From IMG/VR virus record IMGVR_UViG_3300017963_000190, positions 124,001 to 188,000 of that record: a DNA stretch of 64,000 nt; one strand, 5' to 3'. Shown here one piece after another: positions 33,627-38,825 of this stretch. The translations under genes were made by a program, and so were the position numbers. How positions within the stretch are numbered: position 1 is the first letter of the stretch; each line of letters opens with the position of its first letter. The notes beneath the pieces were generated by a model. The model was not told the origin of the DNA. It saw only the letters and a program-made list of their open reading frames with translations, and did not search any database.

Positions 33627-34172
33627 TCAACCGCCGCTGTACCTACGATTCCAATTTGCGTTCTCATCCAGGCGAATCTGTAGGCGCATAGTGTCTTTTG
33701 CATCCCCTAGATGACTTTGCACAGCTGAACAAAGCTTCTCTAGAGCTTTCCACTTCTCCTGCAAGATAGCGAGCTCGGGTAGAATGCTCGCCATAATCAC
33801 CTTAGCTGCCGCTGCGCTAGTACTTTTGGAGATCACGCCAGCGGCTGTAAGATCGGCCCGAGCTAGTATTTCTGCCTTATGCAGTGCTCGTGTAACCCTG
33901 AAAATATAGAATTGCATGACAAGCACCCGATCTAGCCATGCTTGAGCTTTTTGCAGCGCTTCTTGCGCCTTGATCACTGATTTTTTATCCTCCACTGTCA
34001 CACGCTTTGGAATGGACTTCGCAATGTTTATATAGGAGCGCAATTCACCGACGAGGGAGGTAGGGACCTTGAATTTATCTGCATTTTCTTCAAGGCCAAG
34101 CAAAATGGCCTCCAGCTGCTCTCGTTCTCTTAGCTCATCTACTTTGGATTGATCTAGACTAGCTTTAGGCAC
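33627..34172 (-). CDS. Helical hypothetical protein (181 aa, GTG start)
   Basis: ORF with AGAGG/GGTG RBS and a TCTTGTAAA motif upstream. Confidence 0.65.
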   Translation of the reverse strand: MPKASLDQSKVDELREREQLEAILLGLEENADKFKVPTSLVGELRSYINIAKSIPKRVTVEDKKSVIKAQEALQKAQAWLDRVLVMQFYIFRVTRALHKAEILARADLTAAGVISKSTSAAAAKVIMASILPELAILQEKWKALEKLCSAVQSHLGDAKDTMRLQIRLDENANWNRRYSGG

Positions 34173-34346
34173 ACTTCACCTCTAGGACCCGTTGGAACCT
34201 ACTTCTGTTTTACAAGATGAAGGACGAATCTCTGAAAGCTTCTTTTCAGCCTGGAAAACTATTATTCAGCATAGGAAGCATGAACGGTGACAGATTGGTG
34301 TGATGGTAAAATGTGTCTGTGAGACAATGGAAAAATGGATCTAGCC

Positions 34347-34381
34347 AAAAACAGAAAAGCCCACGCGTGCTGCGCAGGCCT
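34347..34381 (-). terminator. Intrinsic terminator
   Basis: Minus strand AGGCCTGCGC-AGCAC-GCGTGGGCTT (10-bp stem, 3 G-U pairs) followed by TTCTGTTTTT. Confidence 0.7.
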
Positions 34382-34451
34382 GTAGATGGCTTATGGTTCA
34401 GTTGCCCATTGGTATTTGGTGGCAATTGGTCTATGACCGCAATTGAACCGT
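34347..34451 (-). ncRNA. Candidate ~105-nt small RNA
   Basis: Lies between a sigma70-like promoter and an intrinsic terminator; 5' stem GGTTCAATTGC/GCAACTGAACC (10 of 11 pairs) encloses a GGTC-ATA-GACC hairpin; no usable ORF. Confidence 0.4.
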
Positions 34452-34456
34452 CTCCG

Positions 34457-34485
34457 GTTCTACCAAGGTTCTATTTGGATGTCAA
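34457..34485 (-). promoter_or_regulatory. sigma70-type promoter
   Basis: TTGACA-N17-TAGAAC with extended -10 TG and an A/T tract upstream; the -10 lacks the final T. Confidence 0.5.
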
Positions 34486-34657
34486 GAAAATAATCCCCTC
34501 TCCCTCACGATTTTCTCTGGAGATATCATACGTTATTCACCAGGGGTTTACTAGGAGCATTCAACTAAAATGGTCAAAAATCTGCGATAAGGCGCACCAA
34601 TCCATCCTCGCTGGTACGCAGCTAGCAAATTCCCCCATAGGCCGCCATCTGCGCTTT

Positions 34658-35737
34658 TTAGGGAGGAGCGCGAGGCCGCGCCTCGATGCAGCGGTTCTGT
34701 ATTTGAGGGGTGCTTGATAGCTCCGCAACCGATGGATGTAGGATGTCTTGACCACGCCGCCGTTTGGTACGGATCAAGGAAAGCGCTACCAATGTAAGAA
34801 TGCACGCCTTCGCTTCGTACAGCGGGAGCCGTGGCTTCTCTTGCAGAGCTTGTACATCTGCTCGTTTGTGACAGAAAAGCTGCCACCGTGGCTCGAACGT
34901 AAGATTGGGCAGTCGTGGGAGGAGCTCGTGCTCAAAGGCTGGCAGCCTATGTAGCTGCATCCTCGTCGTGCTCTCGCAATGGTCGTGGCGTACCTCTACC
35001 TGCTCTGGATGCCTAAGCGAGTATGACCAGAGACGTCTTAGCATATCTGGGAGACGCTCCGCCAGCTTTTCGGCTACCTCTAGTGGTAAGGTTAGCTCAG
35101 TGCAATCATTGATGGTGGCCGCACGTACCTCGTCGGATCCCTTTCTTAGTACACGCCGAATCCTGAATCGGTAAGCTTTTTGGGGGGCGCACTTTCTACG
35201 CCATTCTGCACACGCAGCTTCGCGCACAGGGCCAGACGTGGCGTGACACTTGGGATGAGGGTTGCGGTAATTTGCGTTCTCACATAGTAATTCTAGGACT
35301 TCCTCTCCTAGGTAGTCCTCGAAGCCTGCATCCTGCCGGCGCAGTTGGAGCGGAGTTCTGCATAGGACACGCCTCTCTCCGAGCTCCATGTAGTAGCGAT
35401 ATTTGTCTGGACCCCGCTGCAGCCCGGCGCTGTAGGATAGGAGATGGAGGAACGTGCGGTAGAAGGCGCGCAGATGCTCTTCGTCGGAAAGGTTGTAGAA
35501 GAGCGGACGTGTTTCTTGGTGAAACCTGTAAGGTTTTCTGTATCCTAGCTGGCTAGTCCCTGTGGCGTGCTGGTTGAGCTTTGTGATCCCCAGTAGGATG
35601 GTACTGTGGGTGGGCAACAAGTACGTGCATACTTGTTCCGGGACCCCTTTCCACCACTGTCCGGTTTCAAGGGATACCAGGAAACGCGCTTCTCGCGCTC
35701 CTGGGAAGGATAAGCTATGTGGCCGACGGGGGTGCAC
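34658..35737 (-). CDS. Hypothetical protein (359 aa, GTG start)
   Basis: AAGGAGG RBS; no recognisable family. Confidence 0.6.
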   Translation of the reverse strand: MHPRRPHSLSFPGAREARFLVSLETGQWWKGVPEQVCTYLLPTHSTILLGITKLNQHATGTSQLGYRKPYRFHQETRPLFYNLSDEEHLRAFYRTFLHLLSYSAGLQRGPDKYRYYMELGERRVLCRTPLQLRRQDAGFEDYLGEEVLELLCENANYRNPHPKCHATSGPVREAACAEWRRKCAPQKAYRFRIRRVLRKGSDEVRAATINDCTELTLPLEVAEKLAERLPDMLRRLWSYSLRHPEQVEVRHDHCESTTRMQLHRLPAFEHELLPRLPNLTFEPRWQLFCHKRADVQALQEKPRLPLYEAKACILTLVALSLIRTKRRRGQDILHPSVAELSSTPQIQNRCIEARPRAPP

Positions 35738-35746
35738 CTCCTTATT

Positions 35747-36712
35747 TTACAAGGAGATCTCCCGATTCTCGCCGCGGGCGTCCTGGGTACTGTCGTTCTG
35801 GACGGTGTCTATTTTGACGTCGACCTTTTTTGTCTCCGTCTTATTGGAGGAATCTTCATTAGATTCGATTACTTGGGCTACTAGCTCATGTCCTGGATTG
35901 AGGCGGCAGGCACTCACCTTGTTCTGCGTGCCGTCGACATTGTCTACGTCGTAGATGTCGACAACCCCAGCATCCACAGCACGCTGGAACAGCTGCTGCT
36001 TGAGCTCAGGGGTGCGCATCCCGTCCAGGCGCCACATCACCTTGTTGATGAAATAGCGAGCTCCCACGAAGGGCATTCGATCTTCGCTGCTATGTAGCAG
36101 CCGGATAAGTGCATCGAATGGGTAAGACTCGATGTTGGCTGATGGTTTCTTATCCACAGGCGGCGCTTCGTCGCTGTCGTCCTTGAAAATGGCGCGGCTC
36201 GGGAGATAGATACAGCTGTCGCGCGACAGCACGCGCCGGTCACGTGGGTAGTTGCCTACTAGAATGACAGTGATCCCCCTGCTGATTGCTTGTCGAGCCA
36301 ACGCTGTGTAGTCGGTAGGGCCGACAATCAGGATGCAGATTTCAATGCTGCCGTGCAGAATTTCTGTGTGAGCGTCAAAAAGCAGGTGGAGGTTTACGTC
36401 GTCTTTCGTTACCCCCTGTGCAGTCGTGGCCACCGGAGTAATGCCCCGTTTCAGCCATTCTTCTGCATCGAGCCCATCGGCCTCCTCCATCACAGTGGTG
36501 TAGTAAACCACAGCTTTGGATAAGCGCCCAGATGTACGAGCAAACTCCTCAATGGGGGGAGCTAGTACAGAGTCCTCGTTGTGGTTGTCGATCAACACGG
36601 CGTCCAGATCTACAAAAAGCCCGACATTGGGGCGTGATCTCATACCGATGATGCGGTCCTGTAGGGAGCTGAATCCGCGGTCTGTGTGTTGTCTGGATCT
36701 CTTGTTGTGCAT
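35747..36712 (-). CDS. NYN (LabA/DUF88-like) domain protein with C-terminal winged-helix-like domain; start revised to the ATG at 36712
   Basis: GLFVDLD...KDDVNLHLLFD...CILIVGPTDYTAL...RGITVILVG follows the NYN fold pattern; GAGGAG RBS before 36712 removes the overlap with uvrD. Confidence 0.7.
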   Translation of the reverse strand: MHNKRSRQHTDRGFSSLQDRIIGMRSRPNVGLFVDLDAVLIDNHNEDSVLAPPIEEFARTSGRLSKAVVYYTTVMEEADGLDAEEWLKRGITPVATTAQGVTKDDVNLHLLFDAHTEILHGSIEICILIVGPTDYTALARQAISRGITVILVGNYPRDRRVLSRDSCIYLPSRAIFKDDSDEAPPVDKKPSANIESYPFDALIRLLHSSEDRMPFVGARYFINKVMWRLDGMRTPELKQQLFQRAVDAGVVDIYDVDNVDGTQNKVSACRLNPGHELVAQVIESNEDSSNKTETKKVDVKIDTVQNDSTQDARGENREISL

Positions 36713-36728
36713 TTTACTATTCTCCTCG

Positions 36729-38825
36729 CTAACGCCACCCTGCTTGTCTGCGTTTCCCTCTTCGTCGTCCTCTTCCTCTGCGCTTCTTTGCGTCCAACGC
36801 GCGTAGTAAATAGCTGCCGGCATTGGTGTTGCTCATGTCCGCATACGCCACGGTGTCTCCCATCTCTTCTATGAATGGGGAAGGCATGCAGTCCATGTAT
36901 TGATTGAAGCGGAGCTCGCGTCTAGGCCATGTTACGGTGAGCTCACGCTCCGCCCGAGTTAGAGCGACGAAAAATATACGTCGTTCCTCTTCCAAGTCTT
37001 CTTGCAGCTGACCCTCGGACTTGGGGTTACCGTAGTCATCGGTGTCCTTTATAATGGGCATAAGGCCGTCCGTCGCCCCCACTACATACACCTGCTTGAA
37101 CTCCAAGCCCTTCGCAGCATGACACGTCATCAGGTGCACGTGGTTGCCATCTGTTTCCTCGTCTGTGGATTGCATGAGGGCAGCCCATTCCAAGAACCGC
37201 AGCAGTCCCGCTCCATGGGTGGCGTCAAATTCATGGGCTGCAGCAATAAGCTCCTGGAGGTGATTGAGCTTGTCGATGCCCTTTTCGGTTGAGTCCTTCT
37301 TGAGATGGGTGGCGTACCCCGAAAGTTTGGCGGCTTGTTCTATGATAGGTGCGACCTTATCTTTGGGCATTGTACGCAGGCTTTTGAATATTCGCCGCAG
37401 CTCCTCTGCCCCAGCTCTGGCTTGCCCTGTGAGGACTTCGTCATGCAGCCTCTTTTTGAACGCTTGCATGACAGTTAGGTTCCTCTCTTCCTTCGCTGTG
37501 TAGAATTTAGCGTAGCTCACTTCCCCAAAACGCCGCGGTGGTTTGTTGTAGATGCGGATGAAGCTGCTTTCGTCTGCCCCGTTCACGACGAGCCGCAAGT
37601 ATGCTAGGATGTCTTTTACTGTGGCCCTGTTGTAGAATCCGATGCCGCCTACGACTTTATGTGGAACATTGTGGGTGACCAGCAGTTCCTCGAATATCCG
37701 CGATCGAAAGTGAGCTCGGTAGAGCAAAGCGAAGTCTCGAAACTCTGCTTGACCTGCGCGTACGGCAGATGTGATCTCGTCTACCACAGCCGCACCCTCT
37801 TGCCTATTGTCTTGGTAAACCACACATCGGACAGGACTTCCTTCCTTGATCACAGGTTTGATGCTTTTGTCGGGTCGGTCTGGGTTGTGCGCAATGACGG
37901 AATTTGCCACCTCAGCAATAGGAGGTGTTGATCTGAAGTTCTCTTCTAGGAAGTAAACCGAGACATCCTTGTAGTCTCTTTCCATGAGCTTCAGATTTTT
38001 GGGCTGCGCTAATCGAAAGGCGTAGATGGATTGGTCACCATCTCCCACCACAAACACGTTCCCCCAGTGGCTAGCCAAGTACTTCACCATCTCGTACTGG
38101 CTGACGCTTGTGTCCTGGGTCTCGTCCACTAGTAGGTGCCTTGTCCAGGTTGAGTATTTGGTCCGCACGTCCTCATCATCTCGCAGTAGGCGTACAGTGC
38201 GCATGATGAGATCGTCAAAATCGACGGACTGATTGCGGCGCAGGAAGTAATTGTACTTATCGTAAACCTTGGCGTAGAAGAACTCTTTTTCATCCCCTCC
38301 GCCTTGGTCCATTAGCTGGTCAAAATACTCGTCGGGAGTGATCAGGTGGCTCTTGAGTCGAGATATGAATCTCTTAGAGCAATCTGGATTCCGCCAGTCT
38401 TTCCATCCCCTGATCTCTTTCTTGTCCTTTTCGGTAACTATTGCTGTTGCCTGGACCAGGTAGGACTTGGTGTCGTCGTCATCGCAGATCGTGAACCCGG
38501 AGCTGAGCTGCGCTCTTTCGTGCTCTGCACGAAGGATTCTAGCTCCCAGGGAGTGGAAGGTGGAGATGACTATTTTCTTGGCACGTGCCTTCGGAACCGC
38601 GCCTTGGACACGTTCTCGCATTTCGTTGGCAGCCTTGTTTGTGAACGTAATGGCTACCACGTGGGTTGGTGATATTTCGTGGTGTTCCACAAGGTGCGCT
38701 ATTCGGTGAGTGATCACCCGGGTCTTGCCTGACCCTGGTCCAGCAAGGACAATCGCTGCTCCGTCTAGGTGCTCTACTGCCGATTTTTGCGCAGGGGTTA
38801 ATCCAGTAAGGTAATCTTGGGACAT
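36729..38825 (-). CDS. uvrD: UvrD/PcrA SF1 DNA helicase
   Basis: AGPGSGKT, ITFTNKAANEM, LVDETQD, VGDGDQSIY, LEENFRS, LLYRAHF, LMTCHAAKGLEF, EERRIFFVALTRA. Confidence 0.97.
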   Translation of the reverse strand: MSQDYLTGLTPAQKSAVEHLDGAAIVLAGPGSGKTRVITHRIAHLVEHHEISPTHVVAITFTNKAANEMRERVQGAVPKARAKKIVISTFHSLGARILRAEHERAQLSSGFTICDDDDTKSYLVQATAIVTEKDKKEIRGWKDWRNPDCSKRFISRLKSHLITPDEYFDQLMDQGGGDEKEFFYAKVYDKYNYFLRRNQSVDFDDLIMRTVRLLRDDEDVRTKYSTWTRHLLVDETQDTSVSQYEMVKYLASHWGNVFVVGDGDQSIYAFRLAQPKNLKLMERDYKDVSVYFLEENFRSTPPIAEVANSVIAHNPDRPDKSIKPVIKEGSPVRCVVYQDNRQEGAAVVDEITSAVRAGQAEFRDFALLYRAHFRSRIFEELLVTHNVPHKVVGGIGFYNRATVKDILAYLRLVVNGADESSFIRIYNKPPRRFGEVSYAKFYTAKEERNLTVMQAFKKRLHDEVLTGQARAGAEELRRIFKSLRTMPKDKVAPIIEQAAKLSGYATHLKKDSTEKGIDKLNHLQELIAAAHEFDATHGAGLLRFLEWAALMQSTDEETDGNHVHLMTCHAAKGLEFKQVYVVGATDGLMPIIKDTDDYGNPKSEGQLQEDLEEERRIFFVALTRAERELTVTWPRRELRFNQYMDCMPSPFIEEMGDTVAYADMSNTNAGSYLLRALDAKKRRGRGRRRGKRRQAGWR

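What the first reader, a model, noticed from the sequence alone, without database searches (positions are those of the whole stretch)
34347..34485. Candidate phage small RNA: promoter, structured ~105 nt, terminator
This sits in the largest non-coding gap, at the junction of the replication and tail modules. The minus strand has TTGACA-N17-TAGAAC with extended -10 TG, and a predicted start near 34451-34449 falls exactly at the base of an 11-bp stem (GGTTCAATTGC/GCAACTGAACC) enclosing a GGTC-ATA-GACC hairpin. A 10-bp GC hairpin plus U-tract follows at 34381-34347. There is no ORF with an RBS between them. It does not resemble a tRNA or a family I recognise. Caveats: one stem position is A-C on the minus strand (G-U on plus), and GCAATTG occurs twice 17 bp apart, so it could instead be a DNA operator or cruciform.
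Basis: partly seen in the sequence, partly recalled or inferred. Interest (0 to 1): 0.65.

Follow-up and report, generated by a model that had tools for sequence, protein, structure and literature searches.

The report
Conserved small RNA gene in jumbo phage
The flagged stretch is most likely a small non-coding RNA gene of about 100 nt, with its own bacterial-type promoter and terminator, kept in eleven related uncultivated giant phages; its structure is well supported, but its expression and target have not been shown.

Summary
On the minus strand there is TTGACA, a 17-bp spacer, TGgTAGAAC, a 55-nt hairpin starting about 7 nt later, and a 10-bp hairpin with a T-tract. These sit in the 485-nt gap between a replication module and a structural module of a 260-kb IMG/VR phage record.

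Taken alone, these signals are no better than chance. The support comes from conservation. Ten further distinct relatives, whose flanking protein is 42-56% identical, carry the same unit at the same place.
- The promoter spacer is exactly 17 bp in all eleven, although its sequence varies.
- All have a GGAGAC-type start region, a long first hairpin with compensatory changes, and a terminator whose tail contains UUUUC.
- The fold is specific to the gene strand, so it is an RNA structure and not a DNA cruciform or operator.
- No ORF is conserved. There is no Rfam, tRNA or tmRNA match.

The best reading is a stand-alone phage sRNA made by host sigma-70 RNA polymerase. It would be a new family of a known kind. 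Function is inferred only. Several members expose a pyrimidine-rich loop that resembles the anti-Shine-Dalgarno sequence. No RNA-seq run holds the sequence, and no target was found.

Rival readings are a lambda PR'/6S-like leader, a transcript linked to a replication origin, and a cis attenuator.

The parts
34480..34485 (-). -35 hexamer TTGACA, preceded by a T-rich run at 34486-34494
   Evidence: Read directly from the sequence. It is TTGACN in 10 of 11 relatives and TAGACA in L014, always with a T-run upstream.
34463..34479 (-). 17-bp promoter spacer ending in TGG (extended -10 TG at 34465-34464)
   Evidence: The spacer is exactly 17 bp in all 11 relatives while its sequence varies.
34457..34462 (-). 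-10 hexamer TAGAAC. Relatives have TAGAAA, TATAAA or TAAAAA. It is atypical because it lacks the final T.
   Evidence: The consensus scanner does not call it.
34450..34456 (-). Conserved C-GGAGAC block, read as the discriminator and transcription start region. The inferred start lies around 34453-34450.
   Evidence: GGAGAC is invariant in 10 of 11 relatives and is GGAAAC in L014. The start position is inferred from its distance to the -10; it has not been mapped.
34395..34449 (-). Hairpin P1, 55 nt. It has a basal 6+4-bp helix with one A.C mismatch, an inner GGTC-ATA-GACC hairpin (34438-34428), and an exposed G-poor segment at 34427-34406.
   Evidence: RNAfold. P1 starts 6-13 nt into the GGAGAC block in all 11 relatives, and several Watson-Crick pair types occur at positions 3 and 5-10 of the basal helix. 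In subfamily A, 6 of 17 P1 pairs show double changes.
34382..34394 (-). Single-stranded linker. In five relatives a second hairpin, P2, occupies this position.
34347..34381 (-). Intrinsic terminator: a 10-pair hairpin at 34381-34357 and a U-rich tail at 34356-34347 that contains UUUUC
   Evidence: Scanner and RNAfold. Every relative has a terminator hairpin and a UUUUC-containing tail.
34206..34216 (-). Phage-type promoter-like motif CTTGTAAAACA in front of the 181-aa gene. It is not part of the sRNA. It shows that the downstream gene has its own promoter.
   Evidence: The motif has 17-18 copies in the 260-kb record against 0.5-2 expected. It is conserved before the homologous gene in all relatives.

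Best explanation
Window 34485-34347 (minus strand) is a stand-alone gene for a small non-coding RNA of roughly 100-105 nt, in an uncultivated jumbo phage.

Proposed mechanism, all of it inferred:
- Host RNA polymerase with its primary sigma factor recognises the promoter. The promoter is cTTGAC, a 17-bp spacer, and TG-n-TAGAA(A)C, with an upstream T-run and a GGGAG-like discriminator.
- Transcription starts in or just after GGAGAC.
- The RNA folds into a long irregular hairpin, P1. Five relatives add a second hairpin, P2.
- Transcription stops at an intrinsic terminator whose U-rich tail contains UUUUC.
- The RNA then acts in trans as a regulator.

The most plausible mode of action is base-pairing through the exposed, G-poor, pyrimidine-rich segment of P1. 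In about half of the family this segment resembles the anti-Shine-Dalgarno sequence (CCACCU, CCUCCUU). The terminator hairpin and U-tail would serve as the stabilising or chaperone-binding module.

What is shown: the elements exist and their order, spacing and base-pairing are conserved.
What is inferred: the start site, expression early in infection, trans action, and the target.
For: - Conserved synteny: helicase, NYN protein, a roughly 360-aa protein, a gap of about 500-600 nt, then the 181-aa gene.
- The unit occurs in 11 distinct relatives: the window, L027, L002, L004, L026, L006, L008, L009, L013, L014 and L025. The flanking protein is only 42-56% identical.
- The promoter spacer is exactly 17 bp in 11 of 11, with variable sequence.
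- Each RNA folds as a 5' single strand, P1, an optional P2 and a terminator. Sense-strand z-scores range from -1.8 to -6.7.
- Covariation in five subfamily-A sequences: 88.7% of cells are paired. Thirteen pairs show double changes, against 6.3 +/- 1.6 in shuffles (0 of 500 reached 13) and 2-5 in slid controls.
- The P1 basal helix shows CG, UA and GC alternatives at several positions across both subfamilies.
- Strand asymmetry: in 9 of 10 sequences tested (L014 was not included) the sense strand folds more stably. G.U pairs number 89 on the sense strand and 45 on the antisense strand.
- No ORF is conserved on either strand.
- The downstream gene has its own conserved promoter-like motif.
- Stand-alone phage sRNAs with intrinsic terminators are an established kind, for example lambda PreS and 6S, and StxS (10.1101/2024.10.31.621285).
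Against: - No transcript evidence exists. The only runs holding the sequence are DNA metagenomes.
- The -10 lacks the highly conserved final T, and the consensus scanner does not call the promoter.
- No target was found. The 13-nt complementarities to the phage genome number 2 against 0.77 expected. Pairing with the translation-initiation region (TIR) of the neighbouring gene is no better than shuffled sequence, with mean z -0.6.
- The anti-SD-like loop is clear in only about 6 of 11 members and is weak in the window's own copy.
- The covariation statistics rest on five related sequences. The family-wide pair table was built from individual MFE folds.
- The host is unknown.
Confidence: 0.6

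Rival explanations
1. It is a promoter-proximal terminated leader of the lambda PR'/6S RNA type. A constitutive promoter makes a short terminated RNA at the head of the late or structural gene block. A phage antiterminator then lets polymerase read through into the downstream genes. On this reading the RNA is a by-product, or it doubles as an sRNA.
For: The unit sits exactly at the boundary between the replication genes and the long co-directional structural cluster. The initially transcribed sequence GGAGAC is very strongly conserved, as would be expected of a pause or loading site. Lambda 6S RNA is such a transcript, 194 nt from PR' to tR', with Q-dependent readthrough (10.1101/2024.10.31.621285).
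Against: The first downstream gene keeps its own promoter-like motif (CTTGTAAAATA class, 17-18 copies in the genome) about 35 nt before its RBS in every relative. Between 170 and 260 nt of further conserved non-coding sequence separate the terminator from the gene, including T-rich runs and hairpins that could stop readthrough. No Q-like gene was recognised nearby. Covariation shows selection on the RNA fold itself.
Confidence: 0.12
2. It is an origin-associated transcript, as at T4 oriE or oriF. A host-type promoter would fire an RNA that primes or activates replication at the adjacent repeat-bearing, moderately AT-rich non-coding DNA.
For: [quoted passage not shown] The T4 record places oriF at the 5' end of uvsY, beside the baseplate genes.
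- Here the unit lies next to helicase genes. It is followed by conserved GACAC-type motifs.
- The downstream 181-aa protein has T4 UvsY among its best fold matches.
Against: - The transcribed segment is GC-rich (57-61% in subfamily A), tightly folded, and ends at a strong terminator. That is unlike an AT-rich unwinding element that forms an R-loop.
- The GACAC motifs are not evenly spaced iterons.
- The cumulative GC-skew minimum lies near 52 kb, at the switch in gene orientation, not at 34.4 kb.
- The UvsY link is a weak fold lead only. The Foldseek E-value is 0.2, the Z of 9-9.5 ties with generic helical bundles, Pfam PF11056 gives no hit, and hhalign probability is 0.2.
Confidence: 0.1
3. 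It is a cis-acting leader, meaning a riboswitch, attenuator or processive-antitermination RNA, that controls the 181-aa gene.
For: It lies upstream of, and co-directional with, a conserved gene. It consists of a structured RNA followed by a terminator.
Against: No alternative antiterminator pairing is evident. The gene is 170-260 nt further downstream and has its own promoter motif. There is no Rfam riboswitch or leader match, even at E-values up to 10. The interior of P1 is highly variable in length and sequence (55-98 nt), unlike a ligand pocket.
Confidence: 0.06
4. It is a DNA-level element (operator, cruciform or insulator), or a chance combination of promoter-like and terminator-like sequences, with no RNA function.
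For: GCAATTG is duplicated in the window. In the window alone, promoter-like and terminator-like hits are at background frequency.
Against: The duplicated heptamer is not conserved. The helices use many G.U pairs that would be A.C on the other strand, and in 9 of 10 sequences tested the sense strand folds better. Eleven-fold conservation of order and spacing excludes chance.
Confidence: 0.04

Closest known systems
Lambda 6S RNA and StxS (short terminated transcripts from the late promoter PR' of lambdoid phages)
   Same: A sigma-70-type promoter is followed within 100-200 nt by an intrinsic terminator, at the entry to the late or structural genes. In lambda these RNAs also bind Hfq and have targets (10.1101/2024.10.31.621285).
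   Different: There is no sequence or Rfam similarity. The downstream gene here has its own promoter motif. No Q-type antiterminator was recognised. The host phage is a roughly 260-350-kb, apparently lytic, jumbo phage rather than a lambdoid temperate phage.
Lambda PreS (LPR1) and other stand-alone phage sRNAs such as VpdS
   Same: A small, non-coding, phage-encoded RNA that is thought to act in trans by base-pairing. It is conserved among related phages.
   Different: PreS targets and Hfq dependence have been shown by experiment. Here no target, chaperone or expression data exist, and there is no sequence similarity.
T4 origin transcripts (early-promoter RNA at oriE; the uvsY transcript at oriF)
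   Same: A promoter-driven RNA lies in a non-coding region next to recombination, replication and baseplate genes, with repeat motifs nearby (PMC3016281; AF158101 annotation).
   Different: The T4 origin RNAs form R-loops in an AT-rich unwinding element and are not discrete, terminated, folded RNAs. Here the RNA is GC-rich, supported by covariation, and terminated.
Predicted sRNAs of virulent or jumbo phages such as phiKZ
   Same: A candidate sRNA in a very large virulent-type phage genome.
   Different: In phiKZ a single 75-nt sRNA was predicted and could not be confirmed by Northern blot. The authors note that sRNAs are predicted for only a few virulent phages (PMC8244752). The present candidate has comparative support but no experimental support.

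Membership tests
Any curated Rfam family (release 15), tRNA or tmRNA | Covariance-model score at or above the family's gathering threshold, or an ARAGORN call | tested here: not met
   There are no gathering-level hits in the 64-kb window. At E-values up to 10, only chance-level snoRNA and lncRNA hits of 10-18 bits appear in the gap and in two relatives. ARAGORN finds nothing.
Stand-alone bacterial or phage sRNA gene | Own promoter | tested here: met
   The -35, an exact 17-bp spacer and the -10 are conserved in 11 of 11 relatives. This is a sequence inference, not a mapped start site.
Stand-alone bacterial or phage sRNA gene | Intrinsic terminator that defines a discrete 3' end | tested here: met
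   All 11 relatives have a hairpin and a U-tract.
Stand-alone bacterial or phage sRNA gene | Non-coding, with a conserved secondary structure | tested here: met
   No ORF is conserved. Covariation and strand asymmetry support the fold.
Stand-alone bacterial or phage sRNA gene | A detectable transcript of the predicted size | not testable with these tools
   No RNA run holds the sequence, and the phage is uncultivated.
Base-pairing (seed-type) sRNA | A conserved accessible seed with complementary target sites | tested here: inconclusive
   A pyrimidine-rich, anti-SD-like loop is present in about 6 of 11 members. Complementarity within the phage genome is at the chance level. There is no enrichment against the neighbouring gene's TIR. 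The host genome is unknown.
Lambda PR'/Q-type late leader | The terminated leader is the only route of transcription into the downstream late genes, and a Q-like antiterminator gene lies nearby | tested here: not met
   A separate conserved promoter-like motif precedes the downstream gene. Pfam and PHROGs assign no antiterminator among the neighbours. Q-like proteins could have been missed.
T4-type replication origin (oriF/oriG or oriE) | A promoter followed by an AT-rich unwinding element, or evenly spaced iterons, often at a skew or transcription switch | tested here: not met
   The transcribed part is GC-rich and folded. The motifs after the terminator are irregular. The skew minimum lies elsewhere. 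Origin function itself cannot be tested here.
UvsY recombination mediator (for the downstream 181-aa protein; context only) | Match to Pfam PF11056 or a specific fold match to T4 UvsY | tested here: inconclusive
   There is no Pfam hit, and hhalign probability is 0.2. Foldseek's top hit is 4zwt, with probability 0.99, E-value 0.2 and target-normalised TM-score 0.64-0.68. The VIA Z of 9.0-9.5 ties with generic helical bundles.

The most novel reading that the evidence does not exclude
The RNA is an early phage riboregulator whose exposed pyrimidine-rich loop mimics the 3' end of 16S rRNA (CCACCU, CCUCCUU). By masking Shine-Dalgarno sequences of host or early phage mRNAs, it would contribute to host shut-off or to the early-to-late switch. 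That would be an RNA-based way of taking over translation in a lineage of uncultivated jumbo phages.
Probability: 0.08. Interest if true: 0.75.

Novelty: new member of a known kind. Interest (0 to 1): 0.5.

Why it matters
Very few small RNAs of virulent or jumbo phages are known, and almost none has comparative support (PMC8244752). This is a compact RNA gene that is absent from Rfam. Its promoter geometry, fold and terminator are conserved across eleven divergent, uncultivated giant phages, so it is under selection. It sits at the switch point between the replication genes and the structural genes. The alignment gives a ready seed for a covariance model, which could be used to find more members and hosts. 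The element is also a defined 140-bp fragment that can be tested in vitro even though the phage has not been isolated.

Tried and rejected
- Rfam search at gathering thresholds and at E-values up to 10, and ARAGORN: nothing.
- Phage database, by DNA and by flanking protein: no cultured relative.
- First protein-pattern scans of IMG/VR with single proteins: nothing. An alignment-based scan found only one further viral record.
- DNA-pattern scan of the GTDB genomes: six hits in unrelated taxa, about the number expected by chance. The covariance model matched none of them.
- Covariance model R1, built from subfamily A: with default filters it recovered only its own five training sequences. It did not detect the window copy, which lacks P2. 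Family membership of the window therefore rests on synteny, the promoter, the 5' arm and the terminator.
A pair table anchored on the GUU motif was used instead.
- Coding hypotheses: the 134-aa plus-strand ORF and the 59-aa minus-strand ORF in the gap have no Pfam match and no counterpart in relatives.
- Target search: long-duplex scanning was uninformative. Exact complementarity was at the chance level. Pairing with the neighbouring gene's TIR was not enriched.
- RNA evidence: only two DNA metagenome runs hold the sequence.
- Identity of the flanking proteins: the Atlas, Pfam, PHROGs and PDB sequence searches were uninformative. The UvsY fold lead is not supported by sequence.
- Near-identical contig L010: the gap is 100% identical, so it offers no population variants to test.

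Full report
**What the window is.** The window is bases 124001-188000 of a 260,067-bp IMG/VR virus record estimated to be 74% complete, so it is a jumbo phage. Nearly all genes from 1 to 54220 run on the minus strand.

Upstream of the finding, in the direction of transcription, lie these genes:
- ribonucleotide reductase;
- a DnaB-like helicase;
- a DEAD/ResIII helicase;
- a 5'-3' exonuclease;
- a clamp-like protein;
- a UvrD helicase;
- an NYN-domain protein;
- a 359-aa protein with no family assignment.

Downstream lie a 181-aa protein, several giant proteins, and a baseplate wedge homologue. The finding lies in the 485-nt gap 34173-34657. This is the largest internal stretch of the window without a same-strand ORF of 70 aa or more.

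**Checking the observation.** Everything described is present on the minus strand.
- The promoter is TTGACA (34485-34480), a 17-bp spacer ending in TGG, and TAGAAC (34462-34457), followed by C and GGAGAC (34455-34450).
- The stem GGTTCAATTGC/GCAACTGAACC (34449-34439 with 34405-34395) has one A.C mismatch. It encloses the GGTC-ATA-GACC hairpin.
- A 10-pair hairpin at 34381-34357 is followed by a T-tract running to 34347.

RNAfold gives this structure at -42.3 kcal/mol, z -3.58. The plus strand gives z -2.88. The motifs occur only once in the 260-kb record.

Taken alone, this is not beyond chance. The -10 lacks the conserved final T, so the scanner does not call the promoter. One terminator-like site per 2 kb is also the background rate.

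**Relatives.** Neither the gap DNA nor the flanking protein has a match among 50,697 deposited phage genomes. The 181-aa protein does have 42-72% identical homologues in metagenomes. Their contigs show the same gene order: helicase, NYN protein, a roughly 360-410-aa protein, a gap of about 500-600 nt, then the 181-aa gene.

DNA was obtained for ten further distinct relatives: L002, L004, L006, L008, L009, L013, L014, L025, L026 and L027. Their flanking protein is 42-56% identical to the window's. All ten carry the same unit at the same position.

The promoter table shows the following:
- The -35 is TTGACN in 10 of 11 and TAGACA in L014, always preceded by a T-run.
- The spacer is exactly 17 bp in all eleven, although its sequence differs throughout.
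- The -10 is TAGAAA, TATAAA or TAAAAA, and TAGAAC in the window and L027. TG sits just upstream in ten.
- C(C/G) then GGAGAC follows, or GGAAAC in L014.

Invariant geometry combined with a variable spacer sequence is what a functional sigma-70-type promoter predicts. The few other promoters of this class in the genome read CTTGAC-N17-TATAAT. That fits a small set of host-polymerase promoters, presumably early ones.

**The RNA.** From GGAGAC to the end of the T-tract, the predicted RNAs are 111 nt in the window and 132-161 nt in the relatives. All fold in the same order:
- a short 5' single strand;
- a long irregular hairpin, P1, of 55-98 nt, whose 5' arm begins GUU(C/U/G)A;
- an optional second hairpin, P2, present in L002, L004, L006, L026 and L027, and absent from the window and from L008, L009, L013, L014 and L025;
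- a terminator hairpin;
- a U-rich tail that always contains UUUUC.

For the five P2-bearing sequences, RNAalifold predicts 52 pairs on an unfitted MAFFT alignment. With the three hairpins specified, 88.7% of cells are paired. Thirteen pairs show changes on both sides. Column shuffles give 6.3 +/- 1.6, and 0 of 500 shuffles reached 13. Sliding the partner by 1-3 columns gives 2-5.

Across both subfamilies, a table anchored on the GUU motif shows several Watson-Crick pair types at positions 3 and 5-10 of the P1 basal helix. Position 3, for example, is C-G, U-A or G-C.

The fold is strand-specific (run on the ten sequences then in hand, without L014):
- The sense strand has the lower free energy in 9 of 10.
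- Sense z-scores run from -1.8 to -6.7. Antisense z-scores run from +1.1 to -3.4.
- The sense folds use 89 G.U pairs, against 45 on the antisense strand.
- Threading the same helices onto the opposite strand costs 2-15 kcal/mol.

This argues for selection on an RNA read in the gene direction. It argues against the cruciform or operator alternative. The duplicated GCAATTG in the window is also not conserved.

**Not coding, not a known family.**
- The ORFs overlapping the gap have no Pfam match. They are a 134-aa ORF on the plus strand and a 59-aa ORF on the minus strand.
- The antisense ORFs in the relatives are unrelated to the window's.
- Indels of non-triplet length, including the whole of P2, separate the homologues.
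- Rfam 15 gives nothing at gathering thresholds, and only chance-level hits at E-values up to 10.
- ARAGORN finds no tRNA or tmRNA.

**What it most likely is.** The best-supported reading is a stand-alone sRNA gene. It would be transcribed by host RNA polymerase and ended by its own terminator.

It is unlikely to be merely the leader of the next gene. That gene keeps, about 35 nt before its RBS, the motif cTTGTAAAA(T/C)A in every relative. The motif occurs 17-18 times in the 260-kb record against 0.5-2 expected, mostly just upstream of genes and once upstream of a tRNA-like sequence. I read it as a phage-specific promoter class, which is an inference.

How the RNA acts is also inferred. The unpaired part of P1 is G-poor and pyrimidine-rich. 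In about six of eleven members it reads like the anti-Shine-Dalgarno sequence, with CCACCUUCCC-type loops in L002, L026 and L027 and GCCUCCUUC in L025. The window's copy (GCCACCAAAUACC) is a weaker version. A terminator hairpin with a U-tail is the usual stabilising and chaperone-binding module of trans-acting sRNAs; that is general knowledge of enterobacterial Hfq-dependent sRNAs and was not tested here.

I could not identify a target:
- Exact complementarity to the phage genome is at the chance level, with two 13-mers against 0.77 expected.
- Predicted pairing with the initiation region of the adjacent gene is no better than with shuffled sequence, at mean z -0.6.
- The host genome is unknown.

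RNAalifold also pairs the 5' GGAGA with the UUUUC of the tail in both subfamilies. The GGAGAC block starts only 2-3 nt after the -10, so part of it is probably discriminator DNA rather than RNA. The 5' end needs mapping.

**Rivals.**
1. A lambda PR'/6S-like leader fits the position at the head of the structural block and the very conserved start region. Lambda 6S RNA is exactly such a terminated transcript, and it also behaves as an sRNA (10.1101/2024.10.31.621285). Against this reading are the separate promoter motif, the 170-260 nt of further conserved non-coding sequence, and the lack of a recognisable antiterminator.
2. An origin-associated transcript is suggested by T4. There, oriE uses an early promoter and carries iterons, and oriF lies at the 5' end of uvsY beside the baseplate genes (PMC3016281; AF158101). 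Here, GACAC-type motifs follow the terminator, and the 181-aa protein has T4 UvsY among its top fold matches. However, the RNA is GC-rich, folded and terminated rather than R-loop-forming. The motifs are irregular. The skew minimum lies at about 52 kb. The UvsY link is not supported by Pfam, by hhalign, or by a distinctive Z-score.
3. A riboswitch or attenuator is unlikely, because the P1 interior is hypervariable and the gene is distant.
4. Chance, or a pure DNA element, is excluded.

**Limits.**
- No expression data exist. Only two DNA metagenome runs, one from sediment and one from seawater, hold the sequence, so I did not lay reads.
- The covariation statistics come from five related sequences. 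The tool's own caveats about relatedness apply.
- The covariance model built from those five did not recover the window's P2-less copy. MAFFT could not align all the P1 hairpins. Family-wide pairing therefore rests on individual folds.
- The closest relative by protein, at 72% identity, lies on a contig whose DNA could not be fetched.

**Verdict.** This is a new, Rfam-absent family of a known kind, the phage-encoded small RNA. It is conserved in a rare lineage of uncultivated jumbo phages. Its function is unknown. Interest is moderate, at 0.5.

Noticed in passing
window 34206-34216(-); also about 35743(-), 62294(+), 9595(-), 40917(-), and elsewhere in the 260-kb record: The motif cTTGTAAAA(T/C)A occurs 17-18 times against 0.5-2 expected, mostly just upstream of genes and once before a tRNA-like sequence. 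It precedes the 181-aa gene homologue in every relative. It is probably a phage-specific promoter class, reminiscent of the T4 late promoter TATAAATA. Three copies are followed by ACAGAACCAG.
   Followed up: partly
window 34313-34321(-) and the surrounding 34230-34345; L002:3760-3830, L006:437-500, L004:3757-3800: Directly after the sRNA terminator, all relatives keep a (C)A(C/A)AGACAC motif and further GACAC or TGACA-type repeats. A T-rich run ending in TTCCAA follows. In the relatives, but not in the window, a GC-rich hairpin comes next. This may be a protein-binding or second promoter region. The role is unknown.
   Followed up: partly
window about 34532-34557(-): A conserved block, CCTAGT then about 9 nt then GGTGAATA, lies 45-70 nt upstream of the sRNA -35 in most relatives. 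It looks like a degenerate copy of the phage-type promoter motif. If it is active, it would give a longer isoform of the RNA. It is not repeated elsewhere in the genome.
   Followed up: partly
window 33627-34172(-): The 181-aa protein downstream is confidently modelled as all-helical (pLDDT 87). T4 UvsY is among its best fold matches, but generic helical bundles score the same and there is no sequence support. Its C-terminus (LGDAKDT...LDENANW...YSG) is nearly invariant in the family.
   Followed up: yes
window 34658-38825(-): The gene trio of UvrD-type helicase, NYN-domain protein and an unassigned roughly 360-aa protein is syntenic in all relatives long enough to show it. The 359-aa protein has no Pfam, PHROG or Atlas assignment, and the Atlas model has low confidence.
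   Followed up: partly
window 34576-34596(-): A weak hairpin and T-run lies shortly after the stop codon of the 359-aa gene. Clearer equivalents occur in the relatives (L002:3451-3473, L025:277-289). It is probably the terminator of the upstream operon, so the sRNA unit is bracketed by terminators.
   Followed up: partly
G000:C1 about 215275(+) (outside the window): A tRNA-like sequence lies directly downstream of a copy of the TTGTAAAATA motif, so the phage carries at least one tRNA gene outside the window.
   Followed up: no
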